Source: Octopus sinensis
Taxonomy: Eukaryota
Length of the DNA: 64,000 nt
Direction: 5' to 3'
Assembly: GCF_006345805.1 (NCBI RefSeq)
Contig: NC_043020.1
Location: forward strand, 15,252,001 to 15,316,000
Part shown: positions 610 to 58,120 of the stretch, piece after piece
Layout: every line of letters starts with the position of its first letter
Position numbering within the stretch: the first letter of the stretch is position 1
Made by a program: the position numbers and the translations under genes
Notes under the pieces: generated by a model
Databases searched by the model: none
What the model was told of the DNA's origin: nothing
The model's input: only the letters and a program-made list of their open reading frames with translations

Positions 610-1450
610 TTCCAAAGCCTCTTATAGAGTTTGCCAAAAGCTGTGTTTGCTCTTCCTCTTCATGTTTTTTTAATCTCTTTATCAAGCTTGTCATCATTTG
701 TCACTGTGGAGTGAAGATGAATGAAAACATTGACTGTCTTATTATTTTTACCTTCAAGGATACACTCTAGGCATAACCTTGATTACTACCAGAATGTGAC
801 TGCAACAGAAGCTCCGTCTTCTTTGTGCTTATGGGGGAAGCCAAAACATCTGACTGCTGAAATAAATATATTGACAGTCTGTTGAATATCTTCAAGGGAA
901 TTAGCAAACGGTGCACAGACATCATCATCATCATCATCATCATCATTTAGCGTCCGCTTTCCATGGTGGCATGGGTTGGACGGTGCATCTGGGGTCTGGG
1001 AAGCCAGAAGGCTGCACCAGGCCCAGTCTGATCTGGCAATGTTTCTACAGCTGGATGCCCTTCCTAACGCCAACCACTCTGAGAGTGTAGTGGGTGATTT
1101 TATGTGCCGCCGACAGGTGCCAGACGAGGCTGGCAAACGGCTATGCTCGGATGGTGTTTTTTATGTGCCACCGACACAGGTGCCAGACGAGGCTGGCAGA
1201 CGGCCACACTCGGATGGTGTTGTAAAAAATAAGTCTCTGGTAGTTTGAAAGGAAGACCTTATTTTTTCCTCTTTTTTTTCGTTTATTTCTTCTTTTTGCT
1301 TAATATGGTGCTGATTAAAGATACCACCAGAGGTGCAATTTTTCCACAGGGATCATCAACAAAGACATACTCTAGCATAACTGCAAAGAATAAAGCAAAT
1401 AATACTGGTGCCAACACACATTCTTGCTTTGTACTATTTGTCACTTAAAA
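610..1450 (-). mobile_element. Degenerate RTE LINE RT fragment, split by an insertion at 920-1225
   Basis: Minus strand encodes VTNSTKQECVLAPVLF and ANSLEDIQQTV...RANTAFGKLYKRLW. Confidence 0.65.
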
Positions 1451-3683: not shown

Positions 3684-3960
3684 CATGTATATGTGTGTAT
3701 ATGTTGTATGTGTGTGTATGTATATATATATGTGTGTGTATGTATATATATATGTGTATGATGTATGTGTGTATATGATGTGTGTATATATATATATATG
3801 TATGTATATATGTGTATGTATATATATGTGGTGTGTGTGTGTATATGATGTATATGTGTCTATATGATGTGTGTGTGTGTATATGATGTATGTGTGTATA
3901 TAAGTGCATATGTGTGTATATATATGTGTATATGTGAGTATATGTATGTATATATATTTG

Positions 3961-12699: not shown

Positions 12700-12750
<51 letters not shown>

Positions 12751-14560
12751 GTAGTAGCAGAAAAGAGGAATTTCGATTATCCCCACTTGGTGAGTTGTAA
12801 TGTCTATAAGAAATAAAAAAGGGAAAATATGCACACTTACATAGTTTTAATATAATTTTTAACATATCGACCGGTTTTGCTGTCGCTATTCATGAATAGC
12901 GATAGCGAAACCGGTCAATATATTAAAAATTATATTAAAACTATGTAAGTGTGCATATTTTCCTTTTTTAATTTCTTATATATATGCATGTATGTATGTG
13001 CGTGTATATTTGTTTGTGTATGTTTCCTTACACAGACACATGTATATGTACATATAAATATGTGTATATAAAACCCTTGATACATAATTCAAAGTGCTCA
13101 ATACATGAAGGAAGAGCAATAAAAACACACATAGACACTCACTCCTATGCACCTAAATTCTAAAGAGATGTATTATTTTGTAGCAAGGAATCTTTTCTTC
13201 GCTGATAAATTCTACACCAGAAATTTTTTTCACTATAGATCTAAGGTAGGATTTGAGTTTCTCCCTTTATGAAACTGCCAATGAGAAAGAGAGCGCGAGA
13301 GAGAGAGAGAGAGAGGGAGGGAAGTTGCTTTTGTTTAATGTTTGTTACCAAATTTATATTTGACAACATTAATATTTATTTTTTGCTATTTTTTTTTTTT
13401 TTTTTTCTGACATGGTACTTTTGCTCTCTCCCATTTGATGCTGTGCGAAAATGTTGTCGCAGATGTTGGTGATTGAATTGTGTAGTCTGCCTCATTGCGC
13501 TTCATGTGAGTTACTTACACAACTGCCTATGATTTTTCTAGCAAGAAACAGCATAACTGCAGAAGAAACCAACAAGGGTTTGACAGATAATTCTTGAACA
13601 ATTAAAAGAAGTCTGCTGCTCAACAATGCTGCACCAAAATTTTGCACCAATATACTGCAGTTTCCTTGTTTGTTTTTTTCCTCGATCTCATCTTTTCCCC
13701 ATCTGTCCTCTTCTTTCTATTCTTGCTTCAGCTTGCTAATCCAGAGCATTGGAATCTGGTTGTCAGCCTTTCACAAAATCTCCGTGTTTCAACATGCTTA
13801 CCTTCTAGTTTGATCCATTTCGTCTCCTTAGAGAGTCTGTTTTGTTCTCCCTGTGCCTCAACACTTTCTTTGCCTTTTCTAGGTAACCTCCATTGCATCT
13901 ATATCAAATATTGAGAATAAAAGTTCCTTAAATAAATAAGGCTTTGTTTTGCTAAGTGATTTAATTTTTTGTTCATTATTGAAGTGTTAATTTTATTTTT
14001 GTCTCCATATCAATGTATGTGCTGGGTTGCTGTATTCCAAATGGATTCCCCTGATGGATCTCTACTATGATGTTTGTACTGGTGGTAGGTTTATATACTC
14101 TTGATGGGTTATACATCAAAGGGTCTTATTTTTTTTTTTTTTTTTTTACAGTATTAACTTCATGATAGCTTCAACTATTGAATATTTGCGCAGAATTTAA
14201 CCCTTTAGCATTCCGATTACTCTGTCAAATACGATGCCTATTCATTAATACTGTTTTGAGTTACCCATGCATTGTAGCTTGTAGCTTCAAGATTTCGATG
14301 ATGTAATTGTTTGTTTTAGAATGACATTATAGGATTAGTGTGAGAGGCCAGATCTTGCCAGTTTGAACATAAAACAGTAGAATATTTGAGCCTGATTTGG
14401 CTAGTTTAAATGCTAAAGGGTTAATAATCTTTTGACCATAAATGTTTGTGAATGTAATAACTGTTATTGTTGTTGAGTTTGTCAGCTCTGCTTGAGAATG
14501 GTTGTGTGTCCAATCTGTAACAGTTTTCTCATCTTTATAGTATAAGTGAAGGCATATGGC
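12157..14560 (+). repeat. Segmental duplication, copy 1 (~2.4 kb)
   Basis: Colinear with 15531-17904. Confidence 0.92.
12805..12980. repeat. Near-perfect palindrome with 88-bp arms
   Basis: Centred on tcatga (12890-95); a second copy lies at 16176-16341. Confidence 0.92.
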
Positions 14561-15530: not shown

Positions 15531-16080
15531 AAATTTTGTTGTTAAAATTTATGTACAATAAATTGGATTATTATTCTACACAACACAAAATATTTTAACA
15601 TTTTTTTTTAGTACAATATCTTATAACATTTAATTATAAAAATGTAACAGGATTTTTTTTTTGAAACATTGACCAGCTATGAGGGTCTAACTGATTAGAA
15701 TAGGAATCAGAGGGGTCCATAAATAAAAAAAAATGCTTGAGAATCACTGATTTAGACACTTGTACATGTAGTGATATTTTTGTTTTTGGGAGAGATTGGA
15801 GTGGACTCAGTAGATGTTGAGAATGTGTAAAGTATTTAGTATAGTCGACTATTTTAGCAATATTGCTTATGGAGTAAGCATTCATGTTTATGAATTCCTT
15901 GAGCCCCTGTTGACACTTTTAGAATTCTGTATTGATTTACTTCCAGTCTATTTGAATGAAATTGTTTGTTGGACGTTGAACTCAAGAGGATATTGCAATG
16001 TTGGTCACTGCCTTATCATGTGTAACTCTGACTTTCCAATTCACTTGTCTTTTGATAATGTTAAAAATATTTGAAATATA

Positions 16081-16121
<41 letters not shown>

Positions 16122-17904
16122 GTAGTAGCAGAAAAGAAGAATTTCGATTATCCCCACTTGGTGAGTTGTAATGTATATAAGAAATTAAAAAAAGGAAAAT
16201 ACGCACTTTTAATATAATTTTTATATAACGACCAGTTTTGCTATTGCTATTCATGAATAGTGATAGCGAAACCGGTTGATATATTAAAAATTATATTAAG
16301 ACTATGTAAGTGTGCGTATTTTCCTTTCTTAATTTCTTATATATATATATATGCATGTATGTATGTGCGTGTATGTTTGTTTGTGTATGTTTCTTTACAC
16401 AGACACATAATTCAAAGTGCTCAATACATGAAGGCAGAGCAATACAAACACACATAGACACTCACTCCTATGCACCTAAATACTAGAGAGATGCATTATT
16501 TCATAGCAAGGAATCTTTTCTTTGCTGATAAATTCTACACCAGAAATTTTTTTTTTTACTATAGATCTAAGGTAGGATCTGAGTTTCTCCCTTTATAAAA
16601 CTGCCAATGAGAGAGAGAGAGGGGGAGGGAAGTTGCCTTTGTTTAATGTTTGTTACCAAATTTATATTTGACAACATTAATATTTCTTTTTTGCTTTTTT
16701 TTTATTTTTTAGTTTTTTTTCTGGCATGGTACTTATGCTCTCTCCTATTTGATGCTGTGCGAAAATGTTGTCGCAGATGTTGGTGATTGAATTGTGTAGT
16801 CTGCCTCATTGTGCTTCATGTGAGTTACTTACACAACGGCCTATGATTTTTCTAGCAAGAAACAGCATAACTGCAGAAGAAACCAACAAGGGTTTGGCAG
16901 ATAATTCTTGAACAATTAAAAGAAGTCTGCTGCTCAACAGTGCTGCACCAAAATTTTGCACCAATATACTGCAGTTTCCTTGTTTGTTTTTTTCCTCGAT
17001 CTCATCTTTTCCCCATCTGTCCTCTTCTTTCTATTCTTGCTTCAGCTTGCTAATCCAGAGCATTGGAATCTGGTTGTCAGCCTTTCACAAAATCTCCGTG
17101 TTTCAACATGCTTACCTTCTAGTTTGATCCATTTCGTCTCCTTAGAGAGTCTGTTTTGTTCTCCCTGTGCCTCAACACTTTCTCTGCCTTTTCTAGGTAA
17201 CCTCCATTGCATCTATATCAAATATTGAGAATAAAAGTTCCTTAAATAAATAAGGCTTTGTTTTGCTAAGTGCTTCAATTTTTTGTTCATTATTGAAGTG
17301 TTAACTTATTTTTGTCTCCATATCAATGTATGTGCTGGGTTGCTGTATTCCAAATGGATTACCCTGATGGATCTCTACTATGATGTTTGTACTGGTGGTA
17401 GGTTTATATACTCTTGATGGGTTATATATCAAAGGGTCTTATTTTTGTTTTTTTTTTTGTTTTTTTGCAGTTTTAACTTCATGATAGCTTCAACTATTGA
17501 ATATTTGTGCAGAATTTAACCCTTTAGCATTCAGATTACTCTGTCAAATATGATGCCTATTCATTAATACTGTTTTGAGTTACCCATGCATTGTAGCTCG
17601 TAGCTTCAAGATTTCGATGATGTTGTAATTGTTTGTTTTAGAATGACATTATAGGATTAGTGTGAGAGGCCAGATCTTGCCAGTTTGAACATAAAACAGT
17701 AGAATATTTGAGCCTGATTTGGCTAGTTTAAATGCTAAAGGGTTAATAATCTTTTGACCATAAATGTTTGTGAATGTAATAACTGTTGTTGTTGTTGAGT
17801 TTGTCAGCTCTGCTTGAGAATGTCTATAACACAAAGCATAATGGTTGTGTGTCCAATCTGTAACTGTTTTGTCATCTTTATGGTATAAGTGAAGGCATAT
17901 GGCT
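15531..17904 (+). repeat. Segmental duplication, copy 2
   Basis: Begins inside the hAT MITE and ends at aaggcatatggct (SINE head). Confidence 0.92.
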
Positions 17905-54766: not shown

Positions 54767-54907
54767 AAGAGGAAGCCACCACCTCTTTGCTGCCCATCGA
54801 CAAAGAAGCAACTCATGACATCAAAGTTCAGCTTGAGAGAAGTCCTGCTGGTTTGGATTTTGTTTTAGGAAAAACTGTTCAATGTGGAGTAGCTTTTCAT
54901 CATGCAG
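54767..54907 (+). CDS. POLQ: POLQ exon (LERSPAGLDFVLGKTVQCGVAFHHAG)
   Basis: Translated by hand; GVAFHHAG motif; atcAG acceptor and GTTAG donor; phase 1/1. Confidence 0.93.
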
Positions 54908-55969
54908 GTTAGTTCTAAATTGGTTTTAATTTACTTTTATTGAAATCATCATCATCATCGTTTAGCGTCCGCTTTCCATGCTAGCATGGGTTGGACGGTT
55001 TGACTGGGGTCTGGGAAGCCAGAAGGCTGCACCAGGCCCAGTCTGATCTGGCAATGTTTCTACGGCTGGATGCCCTTCCTAACGCCAACCACTCCATGAG
55101 TGTAGTGGGTGCCTTTTACATGCCACCAGCATAGGTGCCAGACGAGGCTGACAAACGGCCACGATCGGATGGTGCTTTTTACATGCCACCTGCACGGGGG
55201 CCAGGCGAGGCTGGCAAACGACCACAATCGGATGGTGCTTTTTACGTACCACTGGCACGAGGCCAGTCGGGGCGGTGCTGGCAACAGCCACGTTCGGATG
55301 GTTTTCTTACGTACCACCGGCACTGGTCTCACAGCTGCAATTTTCATTGAAGTTGATCGATTTCGATTTTGATTTTGATTTTTGAAATCGATTTTTTATT
55401 TTGCTTCCATTTGTGGTTGCAAACTTATATCAAAGAAAACTGAAACAATTCTTTACTTTTTAAGATGAAACTTACTTTAGAGAAATCCTTAGTTGGTTTT
55501 GATAATCAACGTTTTATAGTAGATTTGTCAGTTTGGTAAAATAACATCCTTGTGTATCTCCATCATATGAATTTATCTGTGGTGTCTAACATTCTATCAT
55601 ATTTCCCGGGATTCTTTGAGCTTAGTGTTAAGGTTCTTTCTTCAAAGGAATCCTTTAGTCTTGGGCTATGATCTACCTTCAGAGCTTTGATATAGGTCAC
55701 TTTGAGCACCAGCTTAATTCATTATCATCACCTGGTTAAGCTTGCTAGGACATTTTTGACCTGCATGTGTCATCCATCTCAGTCCTGCGTTAAAAAAGAA
55801 ATGTCGAACTTGCAAAAACAAAGGCTCTGTAAACAGATGCCTTCTCTCTGGAAATATGTGGACATTATATGTACTGTTCCTAAGAAGAAGTCATGTAGAT
55901 GCAGTGTGGACAGCAGCAGCTGAATGGTGATCTTTTTTGGATATGACACAGATCATTGAAAGGCAGCTG

Positions 55970-56760
55970 ACTTGGTTTCATCAGACATTGAGTCAGAGAA
56001 ACACATACCAGCACTCAAGACCACTGTAAACAACAAAAGATCCAGGATGGCCACCTCTGACACCTCCACAAATATCAAACCAGTGGCTGCTACTGAGACC
56101 CCATATGTTACACCAATGTTCCTGCTGAATGTCAGGGGCCTTGTTATAACCCACCTGAGCAAAACCCCATACCTGAGAGACCTAGTTACCTGTAATCAAG
56201 TAGTATGTATGACACTAGGAGAAACACATCTAACTGCTGACCTGGCAGATGCTGAGATACACAAAGCAATTTCCATTTCAAACTGACAGGAGAAAAAAAT
56301 CTGTGTAGTTGTCACCCCTGTAGGCCTACAACCACACTCAAACTCAGTTTGTGGACACACTAATAGTATATATTGAAAAAATCAAAATAGTAATATGTAT
56401 TACATATCATCCACTAGATGGTCCCAGTTCTGGGGACTCATTTGAAGAGAGCCTAAAAAATATGGAGGACAACAGCCTTCACATATTTCTTCTTGGAGAC
56501 ATCAACCTTCTTAATACTGAATGGCTTGTGGGCCACCTCCTCTCAGGTATGTCACTACATGACTAGAGGTGAGCAGAGTCTCTGCTTGACCTTACAAATC
56601 TGCTATTCATGGAGTAAATAATGTTCCACCCAACAAGAGGTAAAAATGCTCTGGACCTCTACTTTACAAATAATGTGGCACTCATCCATAATGTTAATGT
56701 GAAATTGATGATTTTCTTGGACTATTATGTCGTAGAACTAACAATGTATGGTGCTTCAAA
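55970..56760 (+). mobile_element. Degenerate LINE ORF2 APE-endonuclease region
   Basis: LNVRGL, LGETHL, FLLGDINL and PTRGKNALDLYFTNN, with stops and frameshifts. Confidence 0.8.
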
Positions 56761-56847
56761 GTGTCATTTCCAGGTTGGGTTCATGCATTTGTATTTGCTT
56801 GAGAGACCTGCATGTTCCTGCTTTGATCCAGGTGTAGCATGTGGCTG

Positions 56848-57128
56848 GGGACCTGAAAGATGATAACCCACGCTCAGTTGGGATGAAGCCAGAGGAAACT
56901 CTGGTGAAAGTTTGAAGCACTTCTGATGTGCAAATTGATCATTGGAACCAGGTGTAGGGGTGAAAGACCAATTGAGCCAAATAGTAGCTGGTTCCCTCCA
57001 AAGCTTCCCTCAGGATAGCTGGCACCAACAGGAGAATGACATGCAATTCCATCCCATAAAGCTAACAATTGGAGGCCCTGGGGATGTTGATGGCCTTAAT
57101 CTACTCTTGAACTCAGAATGGGCAAAAC
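56848..57128 (+). pseudogene. Degenerate 28S rRNA fragment
   Basis: Colinear with conserved LSU motifs (GACCCGAAAGATG; GAAGCCAGAGGAAACTCTGGTG; TAGTAGCTGGTTCCCTCCGAAGTTTCCCTCAGGATAGCTGG); most CpGs are converted to TpG/CpA. Confidence 0.88.
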
Positions 57129-57168
57129 AAGCTAAACCTATCCCGAGTGGAAGTAGCTGTATATTACA

Positions 57169-57210
<42 letters not shown>

Positions 57211-57212
<2 letters not shown>

Positions 57213-57615
57213 TAAGGGCTAAAAACCACTATGTGGATAGCCATATGCTAGAAATAGATCATCTATGATCAAACTACAAAGACATTTGAAATTAACCCCC
57301 AATGTAATCGGTGGAACTAAGCACGTGTCTGTTTTTATACGGAAAACTGGTAGTTAGTTTTACAAATTATATTGCTTTTGGAACGATTGTACTGATGAGT
57401 CCTACGGACGAAGGATTATGTAAGTGATTTATTCGTTATTAGATGAAACCGGTATGCGATTAATTCTTGATTTTTATATAATTTTCATCTGTCTTGCCCG
57501 CCTATTGTTCTGGTGTCCGTTGAACTTTCTCTAGAGAACATTCTTTCTTTGTAGTTTGATCGTAGATGATCTATTTCTAGCATATGGCTGTCCACAGTTG
57601 TTTTTAGCCCTTAAA
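57211..57615. mobile_element. ~400-bp element with ~70-bp inverted repeats enclosing the hammerhead (PLE pLTR-like, non-autonomous)
   Basis: 57211-57282 is the near-exact reverse complement of 57546-57615; it abuts a (TA)n tract. Confidence 0.65.
57385..57461 (+). ncRNA. Type I hammerhead ribozyme motif (PLE-type, palindromic short stem III)
   Basis: CTGATGA at 57392-98, long stem II with GTAA loop, GAAA at 57445-48, A-CCGG-T stem III, GUA triplet at 57452-54, 7-bp stem I (GATTGTA/TGCGATT, with wobbles). Confidence 0.75.
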
Positions 57616-57859
57616 ATATGCACACGTATTAGAATTTTCTCTGATTTTTCAGATTTTTGTATGCTAGGCTACTGGTTTTAAATTGCTATTAATTAAATTA
57701 ATATTCAATTTATCTCCTTCATTATTTAAATGCATACACACACACACACATACACACACACACACATACACACATATAGTTTTAGAATATTTGCTTGTTT
57801 TGGTTTATGTATTTTTTGGCATAATTAACCACATACATTTTCTATGATGACATCATTGA

Positions 57860-58120
<261 letters not shown>

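What the first reader, a model, noticed from the sequence alone, without database searches (positions are those of the whole stretch)
57385..57461. Complete hammerhead ribozyme motif on the sense strand of a POLQ intron
Seen: all catalytic core residues are present (C3-U4-G5-A6-U7-G8-A9, G12-A13-A14, A15.1-U16.1, GUA triplet with predicted cut after 57454). Stem I has 7 bp, stem II is long with a GUAA loop, and stem III is the self-complementary ACCGGU. It lies ~415 nt upstream of the motif V/VI exon. Established: PLE-associated type I hammerheads often have palindromic short stem III and cleave best as dimers. Inference: POLQ pre-mRNA could be cut co-transcriptionally, tuning expression or truncating transcripts within the helicase. 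The 10.1-11.1 pair is G.U, which may weaken activity.
Basis: partly seen in the sequence, partly recalled or inferred. Interest (0 to 1): 0.85.

Follow-up and report, generated by a model that had tools for sequence, protein, structure and literature searches.

The report
Insertion-split hammerhead relic in POLQ intron
The hammerhead ribozyme motif is really there and is not a chance match, but it looks like a single, insertion-disrupted copy left by a Penelope-like or retrozyme-type mobile element inside a POLQ intron, so it is an ordinary transposon relic and probably does not regulate POLQ.

Summary
A type I hammerhead descriptor hits only this site in the window, and 0 of 600 shuffles match at helix I >=6 bp and helix II >=3 bp.

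- Right after CUGAUGA lies a textbook helix II plus core: GUCC-UAC-GGAC-GAA (57399-57412). Its expectation is 0.004 per window. Removing 35 nt (57413-57447) leaves a canonical metazoan type I hammerhead.
- The motif sits inside a 407-bp inverted-repeat element (73-nt arms, 93% identity). Its arms end in A-runs and it abuts a (TA)n microsatellite.

A metagenome scan found 18 loci with intact hammerheads of this design. Helix I covaries among 11 of them. Two lie about 750 nt 3' of RT+GIY-YIG ORFs (Penelope-like elements) and one contig carries tandem copies.

The copy here is single. Its helix III is one base pair plus a CCGG loop, a dimer-dependent type. The 10.1-11.1 pair is G.U. In its native context the predicted hammerhead pairings have probability near 0. 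No hammerhead was found in the POLQ introns of two distant relatives. Cleavage of POLQ pre-mRNA is therefore unsupported but untested. No further copies of the element could be retrieved.

The parts
57385..57391 (+). Helix I, 5' strand (positions 2.7-2.1), GAUUGUA. A possible 3-bp extension pairs 57380-57382 with 57464-57466 across a 2x2 internal loop.
   Evidence: Read. Descriptor hit. Pair probabilities are 0.12-0.72 in the isolated 77-mer and near 0 in native context.
57392..57398 (+). Catalytic core C3-A9, CUGAUGA
57399..57409 (+). Canonical helix II hairpin GUCC-UAC-GGAC with a G10.1-C11.1 closing pair. This is the probable ancestral helix II.
   Evidence: Aligned as helix II by Rfam Hammerhead_3 and by model R1. 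Half-hammerhead expectation is 0.004 per window.
57410..57412 (+). First GAA, the probable ancestral G12-A13-A14. It is now followed by G instead of A15.1.
57413..57444 (+). Putative 32-nt insert flanked by the GAA direct repeat. It contains GUAAGU at 57420-57425.
   Evidence: Unique in the window. Fold. That it is an insertion is an inference.
57445..57447 (+).
   Evidence: R1 gives a separate 8.2-bit match at 57445-57453.
57448..57453 (+). Helix III, palindromic ACCGGU. In a monomer it is A15.1-U16.1 plus a CCGG loop. It forms a 6-bp helix only in a dimer.
   Evidence: The same hexamer occurs in 18 intact metagenomic hammerheads.
57454..57455 (+). H17 is A57454. The predicted scissile bond is 57454/57455.
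   Evidence: Cleavage was not tested.
57455..57461 (+). Helix I, 3' strand (positions 1.1-1.7), UGCGAUU
57210..57282 (-). Left arm of the inverted repeat. Read on the minus strand it ends GCCCTTAAAA plus six more A (A10). Interpreted as a 73-nt, 5'-truncated inverted copy of the element's 3' end.
   Evidence: (73 nt, 93% identity)
57283..57545 (+). Unique 263-nt centre of the element, which carries the hammerhead motif
   Evidence: No other copy in the window.
57546..57616 (+). Right arm of the inverted repeat, ending GCCCTTAAAA. Interpreted as the 3' end of the plus-oriented copy.
   Evidence: The whole 416-nt stretch folds at -166.8 kcal/mol, z = -15.
57164..57205 (.). (TA)n microsatellite immediately 5' of the element. 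It is the probable insertion target. The right flank resumes with TATGCAC.
   Evidence: Microsatellite insertion bias of Penelope-like elements is described in PMC8557442.
54908..57875 (+). The 2,968-nt intron that hosts the element. It has a GT donor after ...AFHHAG and an AG acceptor before GLTFDERE.
57876..58089 (+). POLQ-type helicase exon with motifs V/VI: ...[19 protein letters not shown]...[12 protein letters not shown]...
   Evidence: Three of the listed hits (71-79% identical) are named DNA polymerase theta, and the neighbours in L002 hit PF21099 POLQ_helical.

Best explanation
The motif is a hammerhead ribozyme by descent. It is a single copy of the canonical metazoan type I design: helix I of about 7 bp, helix II GUCC/GGAC, and a palindromic ACCGGU helix III. 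Penelope-like elements (PLEs) and their non-autonomous retrozyme derivatives carry this design near their 3' ends.

It reached the POLQ intron as part of a roughly 407-bp insertion at a (TA)n microsatellite. The insertion most likely consists of two head-to-head, 5'-truncated copies of the element's 3' end: one of 73 nt inverted and one of about 334 nt direct. Both end in A-runs.

Later, or already in the source copy, 32 nt were inserted with a GAA duplication between the GAA core and helix III. By accident this keeps the motif topologically complete. The old helix II, the old GAA and the insert now fold as a long irregular stem II closed by a G.U pair.

In its parent elements the ribozyme is thought to process tandem or multimeric transcripts as a dimer. 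Here it is a lone monomer with a 1-bp helix III, so it is expected to cleave POLQ pre-mRNA negligibly and to be a neutral relic.

Shown: the motif, its non-random nature, the nested canonical half, the inverted-repeat carrier, and the PLE or tandem context of intact look-alikes. Inferred: the insertion event, the PLE or retrozyme origin of this copy, and its inactivity.
For: - Unique descriptor hit in the window, with 0 of 600 shuffles matching at helix I >=6 and II >=3.
- The nested half-hammerhead CUGAUGA-GUCC-N3-GGAC-GAA has an expectation of 0.004 per window. The 3' module plus helix I >=7 also has 0.004 per window. The joint expectation is about 6e-7.
- Rfam Hammerhead_3 and my model R1 both align 57392-57412 as core, helix II and GAA. 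R1 scores 57384-57426 at 21.7 bits, the best hit in the window, and matches GAAACCGGU separately.
- The pattern made by deleting 57413-57447 finds 18 metagenomic loci. Helix I was not in the pattern and shows changes on both sides at all 6 pairs in 11 of them (87% of cells paired; 0 of 500 shuffles reach that).
- In L015 and L006 the intact ribozyme lies about 750 nt 3' of an RVT_1 + GIY-YIG ORF on the same strand, within roughly 4.8-kb partial tandems. L009 has 4 tandem copies.
- The carrier has 73-nt arms at 93% identity, ending in A10 and A4, and abuts (TA)n. PLE insertions are described as often having an adjacent inverted 5'-truncated copy and a microsatellite bias, with (TA)n named for the Naiad clade (PMC8557442).
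- A hammerhead monomer with a single-bp helix III and a palindromic tetraloop cleaves only 6% in 1 h (PMC7229834).
- G10.1-C11.1 is highly conserved (PMC4209133).
- There is no second motif in the window.
- The hammerhead helices have probability near 0 in contexts of 263 nt or more.
Against: - No other copy of the element or of the insert could be retrieved. Family membership, the insert-free ancestor and the PLE link of this particular copy are therefore untested.
- No RT or GIY-YIG ORF was found among the ten large window ORFs tested, of 26 of at least 110 aa.
- The inverted repeat with TTAA or TA at its ends fits a MITE equally well.
- I am not aware that PLEs carry A-tails. That is from memory and was not checked.
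- In the isolated 77-mer the long stem II is predicted to form (P = 0.69-0.84) and the canonical short one is not (P = 0.03).
- Rfam's curated models do not call it. They also miss 9 of 10 loci with intact look-alikes.
Confidence: 0.6

Rival explanations
1. The motif is an active intronic hammerhead with a long stem II. It cleaves POLQ pre-mRNA co-transcriptionally, possibly as an intermolecular dimer, and so tunes or truncates POLQ expression.
For: - All core residues and three helices are topologically present.
- The long stem II closure is predicted in the isolated 77-mer with P = 0.69-0.84.
- The competing downstream partners (57484-57536) are transcribed only after the motif is complete, which leaves a short kinetic window.
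- From memory, sense-strand intronic hammerheads are known in amniotes. The reference appears in the reference list seen.
Against: - Single copy with a dimer-type 1-bp helix III. An axolotl monomer of that type cleaves 6% in 1 h.
- G.U at 10.1-11.1, whereas G-C is conserved.
- A 5x4 internal loop follows only 3 bp of helix II, and 3 of the 7 helix I pairs are wobbles.
- C3-G5 are sequestered by CGG of helix III with P = 0.96-0.99.
- The hammerhead helices have P near 0 in the native context.
- The motif lies in a transposon-like insertion.
- No hammerhead occurs in the equivalent introns of two distant relatives.
- Vertebrate retrozymes are depleted from introns, which suggests active copies there are selected against (abstract read).
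Confidence: 0.05
2. The long stem II is not an accident. It is a lineage-specific hammerhead variant of an octopod PLE or retrozyme family, functional for that element in tandem transcripts. This locus is merely a solo copy of it.
For: - PLE min-hammerheads have a larger than usual helix II (PMC4209133).
- PLE cores with 35-50-nt spacers between the half-cores have been catalogued (PMC8557442).
- The insert pairs with the old GAA region (ACGAA/UUCGU) to give a continuous hairpin.
Against: - A canonical GUCC-N3-GGAC-GAA nested inside a designed long stem II would be a coincidence of roughly 1e-4 per site.
- The fold is not more stable than shuffles (z = -0.95).
- G.U at 10.1-11.1.
- No family copies are available for a covariation test.
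Confidence: 0.17
3. Chance resemblance. An AT-rich intron happens to contain CUGAUGA, GAAA and complementary flanks.
For: - No Rfam hit at gathering.
- The 77-mer fold has z = -0.95.
- If many windows of a multi-gigabase genome were screened, single-descriptor hits at about 1e-3 per window are expected somewhere.
Against: - The joint expectation of the two largely independent modules at one site is about 6e-7 per window, or roughly 0.02-0.03 per 2.5-Gb genome.
- The deleted form is identical in all 24 fixed positions to natural PLE hammerheads.
- Rfam's gathering score misses 9 of 10 loci with intact look-alikes, so its silence carries little weight.
Confidence: 0.06
4. About the carrier only. 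The 407-bp unit is a MITE or foldback DNA transposon with 73-bp TIRs and a TTAA or TA target duplication that happens to carry a hammerhead-derived segment. It is not a head-to-head pair of truncated retroelement ends.
For: - The arms reach the very ends of the unit.
- TTAA or TA is present at both junctions.
- Another palindromic MITE-like family is present in the window.
- TIR elements and MITEs are annotated in Octopus vulgaris (PMC13282606).
Against: - From memory, the termini GGGCT...AGCCC do not match the piggyBac (CCC...GGG) or Tc1/mariner TIR starts.
- The unequal A10 and A4 runs at the outer ends look like retroelement tails.
- Hammerheads are known from PLEs and retrozymes, not from DNA transposons.
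Confidence: 0.3

Closest known systems
Hammerheads of Penelope-like elements, located in the pseudo-LTRs (Cervera & de la Pena 2014, PMC4209133; Craig et al. 2021, PMC8557442)
   Same: - Type I topology, a palindromic short helix III (ACCGGU) and no evident loop-loop contacts.
- The carrier has an inverted-repeat structure and sits at a microsatellite.
- Intact ribozymes identical in all fixed positions lie 3' of RT+GIY-YIG ORFs in L015 and L006.
   Different: - No RT/GIY-YIG ORF or second pseudo-LTR here.
- 35 extra nt separate the first GAA from helix III, giving G.U at 10.1-11.1.
- Single copy.
- No sequence similarity to the PLE loci beyond the core.
Metazoan non-LTR retrozymes, i.e. tandem repeats of 170-400 nt with type I hammerheads expressed as circRNAs (Cervera & de la Pena 2020, PMC7229834)
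   Same: - Type I hammerhead with a weak palindromic helix III.
- Unit size is about 370-410 bp, similar to the mussel repeats of 350-390 bp.
- Low GC and a strongly self-paired unit.
- L009 shows the same ribozyme design in short tandem repeats.
   Different: - Not tandem and only one ribozyme, so no monomer can be excised or circularised.
- The self-pairing comes from 73-bp near-perfect terminal inverted repeats rather than a viroid-like rod.
Amphibian satellite and axolotl HHR_Amex1 hammerheads
   Same: Helix III is one base pair capped by a palindromic tetraloop. Such monomers cleave poorly (6% in 1 h) and dimers cleave well.
   Different: Those have a 4-bp helix II, conserved loop 1-loop 2 contacts and tens of thousands of tandem copies.
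Conserved intronic hammerheads of amniotes (Rfam Hammerhead_HH9 and HH10)
   Same: Sense-strand, intronic location in a protein-coding gene.
   Different: - From memory, those are ultraconserved and have stable helices and tertiary contacts.
- Here there is no Rfam match to that clan beyond a 14.6-bit partial hit and no conservation in two relatives.

Membership tests
Hammerhead ribozyme, type I | Conserved core C3-U4-G5-A6-N7-G8-A9, G12-A13-A14, A15.1-U16.1 and H17 (not G) | tested here: met
   CUGAUGA at 57392-57398, GAA at 57445-47, A57448/U57453 and A57454
Hammerhead ribozyme, type I | Three helices around the core, with the open end in helix I | tested here: met
   Helix I has 7 bp (3 G.U). 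Helix II closes with 3 bp and then becomes irregular. Helix III is 1 bp in a monomer and 6 bp in a dimer.
Hammerhead ribozyme, type I | G10.1-C11.1 closing pair of helix II | tested here: not met
   The pair is G57399.U57444 in the complete reading. A G-C pair exists only in the nested hairpin 57399-57409, whose GAA is not followed by A15.1.
Hammerhead ribozyme, type I | Score at or above the curated Rfam threshold (RF00163, 34 bits) | tested here: not met
   No hit at gathering and only a 14.6-bit Hammerhead_3 partial match. This is a weak test, because only 1 of 10 loci with intact look-alikes passes.
Hammerhead ribozyme, type I | Covariation supporting the helices among homologues | not testable with these tools
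   No homologous copies of this locus were found. Covariation is shown only for the look-alike set A1.
Hammerhead ribozyme, type I | Site-specific Mg2+-dependent self-cleavage | not testable with these tools
   Needs in vitro transcription. The thermodynamic proxy did not discriminate.
Penelope-like element (PLE) hammerhead | Located in a pseudo-LTR flanking an RT + GIY-YIG ORF | tested here: not met
   No such ORF among the ten window ORFs tested, of 26 of at least 110 aa. A heavily 5'-truncated copy would lack it, so this does not exclude a PLE origin.
Penelope-like element (PLE) hammerhead | Palindromic 15.2-16.2 / loop 3, i.e. a dimer-type helix III | tested here: met
   ACCGGU at 57448-57453. 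The criterion comes from PMC4209133.
Penelope-like element (PLE) hammerhead | Insertion architecture: an adjacent inverted 5'-truncated copy and a microsatellite target | tested here: inconclusive
   The 73-nt inverted arms and the abutting (TA)n fit (PMC8557442). A MITE gives the same picture.
Non-LTR retrozyme | Two or more tandem repeats of 150-450 bp, each with a type I hammerhead | tested here: not met
   One motif and no direct repeat of the unit in the window
MITE / TIR DNA transposon | Terminal inverted repeats, a target-site duplication and multiple genomic copies | tested here: inconclusive
   TIR-like arms are present. TTAA or TA is ambiguous because it is palindromic. Copy number cannot be tested and there is no second copy in the window.

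The most novel reading that the evidence does not exclude
The 32-nt expansion did not kill the ribozyme. On this reading the element is a hammerhead with an unusually long three-segment helix II and a G.U closing pair. It still self-cleaves, alone or by pairing ACCGGU between two nascent transcripts, so that an octopod POLQ intron carries a working transposon-derived ribozyme that lowers or truncates POLQ mRNA. The flanking 73-bp dsRNA clamp might gate it.
Probability: 0.04. Interest if true: 0.6.

Novelty: new member of a known kind. Interest (0 to 1): 0.2.

Why it matters
As it stands this is one more degenerate transposon-borne hammerhead, of the kind found in thousands of copies in invertebrate genomes. 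It is useful mainly as an annotation of this intron and as a caution. A motif can be complete on paper because an insertion with a 3-nt duplication regenerated the core junction.

It would matter only if the copy cleaved. That would be an invertebrate example of a transposon-derived ribozyme acting on a DNA-repair gene's pre-mRNA.

A methodological point also emerged. Rfam's type I model at gathering recovers only 1 of 10 loci with intact ACCGGU-type PLE hammerheads, so a negative Rfam scan says little for this class.

Tried and rejected
- **Rfam at gathering and at E <= 10.** No usable hammerhead call. The positive control showed the model is insensitive to this class, so this was not used as evidence against the motif.
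- **MFE z-score of the 77-mer.** It is -0.95, which is uninformative.
- **Fraction of the ensemble in the hammerhead-competent fold.** It is 3e-4 for the native sequence. It is also 4.5e-4 for the deleted form and 6e-4 to 7e-3 for intact natural look-alikes. The measure does not discriminate, because CUG/CGG mispairing is generic to ACCGGU-type monomers.
- **Orthologous introns.** The best POLQ exon relatives are only 83% and 79% identical in protein, and only exons align. They contain no hammerhead but are too distant to test insertion polymorphism.
- **Fishing for copies of the element.** Translations of its ORFs and a 22-mer from the arms in metagenome, prokaryote-genome and viral collections all returned nothing.
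- **Possible relation to the GAAACCGGT-containing palindromic elements at 12.8 and 16.2 kb.** Only short AT-rich matches and no CUGAUGA, so rejected.
- **Similarity of the element to the metagenomic PLE loci beyond the core.** None.
- **RT or transposase ORFs in the window.** None among the ten ORFs tested. One call failed on coordinates.
- **A source for the 32-nt insert in the window.** None.

Full report
**Observation**

The sequence at 57385-57461 (+) reads GAUUGUA-CUGAUGA-GUCCUACGGACGAAGGAUUAUGUAAGUGAUUUAUUCGUUAUUAGAU-GAA-ACCGGU-A-UGCGAUU.
- C3-A9 at 57392-57398
- G12-A14 at 57445-57447
- A15.1 at 57448 and U16.1 at 57453
- GUA ending at 57454
- a 7-bp helix I (57385-57391 with 57455-57461; four Watson-Crick pairs and three G.U)
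- G57399.U57444 at positions 10.1-11.1

RNAfold reproduces the long, irregular stem II. It has 3 bp, a 5x4 internal loop, 6 bp, a bulge, 6 bp and a GUAA loop.

**Gene context**

The gene context is also right. The exon at 57876-58089 (+) encodes ...[41 protein letters not shown]...[15 protein letters not shown], which are helicase motifs V/VI of the POLQ type. Three database relatives are named DNA polymerase theta. A related locus has POLQ_helical exons downstream. The previous exon ends at 54907 with ...AFHHAG. The motif therefore lies on the sense strand of a 2,968-nt intron (54908-57875), 415 nt before the exon.

**Is it more than chance?**

I wrote a deliberately loose type I descriptor. 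It required helix I >=4 bp, CUGANGA, a helix II closure of >=2 bp with up to 60 nt in total, GAAA, a palindromic or hairpin helix III, and H17. On both strands of the window it hits exactly once, at this site.

In 600 dinucleotide-preserving shuffles of the window the loosest setting gave 0.027 hits per window. Nothing matched at helix I >=6 with helix II >=3.

Rfam does not call a hammerhead at gathering. In a permissive scan of 57300-57550 it gives only a 14.6-bit partial Hammerhead_3 match against a threshold of 48.5. I do not weigh this heavily. Of ten loci holding intact natural hammerheads of the same design, Rfam's type I model passed only one, at 34.8 against 34 bits.

The partial Rfam alignment and my own covariance model both read 57392-57412 as CUGAUGA, then helix II GUCC-UAC-GGAC (G10.1-C11.1, 4 bp), then GAA. 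That is the textbook 5' two-thirds of a hammerhead. Such a half-hammerhead is expected 0.004 times per shuffled window and occurs once, here.

The 3' module is GAAA, the palindrome, H17 and a helix I of >=7 bp, with no helix II condition. It is also expected 0.004 times per window. There are about 27 CUGANGA sites per shuffled window. Both modules at the same site are therefore expected about 6e-7 times per window, or a few hundredths per multi-gigabase genome.

Removing 57413-57447 (35 nt) gives GAUUGUA-CUGAUGA-GUCC-UAC-GGAC-GAA-ACCGGU-A-UGCGAUU. This matches the published description of canonical metazoan type I hammerheads: helix I of about 6 bp, helix II of 4 bp, and helix III of 1-2 bp capped by a small palindromic loop (PMC4209133).

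The extra segment is 32 nt flanked by a GAA direct repeat. Such a duplication automatically regenerates a GAA next to helix III, and that is why the motif still looks complete. The alternative is that a designed long stem II happens to contain a canonical helix II plus GAA. That costs about 1e-4 per site, so I favour the insertion, as an inference.

**Natural look-alikes**

I scanned JGI metagenome contigs for CTGATGAGTCC-N3-8-GGACGAAACCGGT and found 18 loci. Eleven of them were aligned with their flanks. Helix I was not part of the pattern. It shows changes on both sides at all six pairs, with 87% of cells paired, and 0 of 500 shuffles reach that. These are real type I hammerheads.

- In L006 the same arrangement is on the minus strand.
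- Both contigs show direct repeats with a period of about 4.8 kb.

This is the defining architecture of endonuclease-positive Penelope-like elements with pseudo-LTRs. L009 carries four copies in short tandem repeats with spacings of 185 and 607 nt, which is retrozyme-like. Beyond the ribozyme core, none of these loci resembles the window.

The motif sits in the centre of a 407-bp unit. Its ends, 57210-57282 and 57546-57616, are inverted repeats of 73 nt at 93% identity. The unit folds at -166.8 kcal/mol with z = -15.

Aligned, both arms end ...GTTTTTAGCCCTTAAAA. The left arm, read on the minus strand, continues with six more A. Both are then followed by TAT.... The unit directly follows a (TA)n microsatellite at 57164-57205, and the right flank resumes TATGCAC.

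Craig et al. describe PLE insertions as often having an inverted 5'-truncated copy next to the upstream pseudo-LTR, which forms inverted repeats. They also describe an insertion bias for microsatellites, naming (TA)n for the Naiad clade, and place the hammerhead near the 3' end (PMC8557442).

A head-to-head pair of truncated 3' ends (73 nt inverted, about 334 nt direct, unequal A-runs) at a (TA)n site fits that description. It also puts the hammerhead in sense about 155 nt from the 3' end of the direct copy.

A MITE with a TTAA or TA duplication gives almost the same picture. I cannot separate the two without other copies. The unit has no second copy in the window. None could be fished from the available collections through translated ORFs or a 22-mer of the arms. 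No RT or GIY-YIG ORF was found among the ten window ORFs tested, out of 26 of at least 110 aa.

**Does it act on POLQ pre-mRNA?**

Nothing here supports that, though nothing here can formally exclude it. The points against are:
- Helix III is A-U plus a CCGG tetraloop, the dimer-dependent type. An axolotl retrozyme monomer with such a helix III self-cleaved 6% in one hour, whereas dimers were efficient (PMC7229834).
- There is no second motif within 64 kb. A dimer would need two separate pre-mRNAs.
- The 10.1-11.1 pair is G.U, whereas G-C is highly conserved.
- Helix II is interrupted after three pairs.
- In the isolated 77-mer the core C3-G5 pairs with CGG of helix III (P = 0.96-0.99). The competent fold is about 3e-4 of the ensemble. 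The same is true of intact look-alikes, so I do not count this.
- In contexts of 263 nt or more the helix I and II pairings have predicted probability near 0, because the core pairs with 57484-57536. Only a brief co-transcriptional window remains.
- The equivalent introns of the two nearest available relatives have no hammerhead. These relatives are distant (83% and 79% protein identity in the exon), and their introns do not align.
- A 2026 preprint reports that vertebrate retrozymes are depleted from introns. That is consistent with surviving intronic copies being inert.

**Verdict**

The class assignment (a PLE-type, dimer-style type I hammerhead) is supported by comparison with intact elements. 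The functional inference is not supported.

The best explanation is a transposon-borne hammerhead relic, split by a 32-35-nt insertion and carried into a POLQ intron at a (TA)n site. It is a new, degenerate member of a very large known class. Interest is low.

Noticed in passing
window 56850-56991 (+), probably about 56840-57160: A diverged 28S/LSU rRNA-derived fragment lies on the sense strand of the same intron. Rfam RF02543 scores 101.6 bits over 56850-56991, and 131.9 bits in truncated mode over 56600-57300 (model positions 431-1106). By eye the rRNA-like sequence runs right up to the (TA)n that precedes the hammerhead-bearing element. The rRNA piece, the microsatellite and the element might be one composite retro-insertion.
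   Followed up: partly
window 12805-12985 and 16171-16341 (within the duplicated segments 12708-13041 and 16079-16408): A palindromic MITE-like element of about 180 bp is present twice (89% identity over 340 bp). Its arms contain GAAACCGGT/ACCGGTTTC, which explains the excess of that 9-mer in the window. It has no CUGAUGA and is unrelated to the hammerhead.
   Followed up: partly
window 57210-57282 with 57546-57616: A 73-bp near-perfect intronic RNA duplex lies about 260 nt upstream of the helicase exon. In a cephalopod it would be an obvious candidate ADAR substrate. It could also affect local splicing or folding independently of any ribozyme.
   Followed up: no
window 57420-57425: A consensus 5' splice-site hexamer, GUAAGU, lies on the sense strand inside the putative 32-nt insert.
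   Followed up: no
L015 976-3096 with 3847-3876; L006 1500-3365 (-) with 713-742 (-): Metagenome contigs carry apparently intact Penelope-like elements: an RT + GIY-YIG ORF, a partial tandem of about 4.8 kb, and an ACCGGU-type hammerhead about 750 nt 3' of the ORF. Rfam's Hammerhead_1 model at gathering does not detect the ribozyme in L015 or L006.
   Followed up: partly
L009 35-64, 642-671, 827-856, 1434-1463 (-): Four identical type I hammerheads at alternating spacings of 607 and 185 nt occur in a 1.5-kb lake-metagenome contig. This is a retrozyme-like tandem array with two ribozymes per 792-nt unit.
   Followed up: partly
window 57733-57784: A (CA)n-rich microsatellite lies between the element and the exon. 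(TA)n tracts are very frequent across the window, as shown by the many hits.
   Followed up: no
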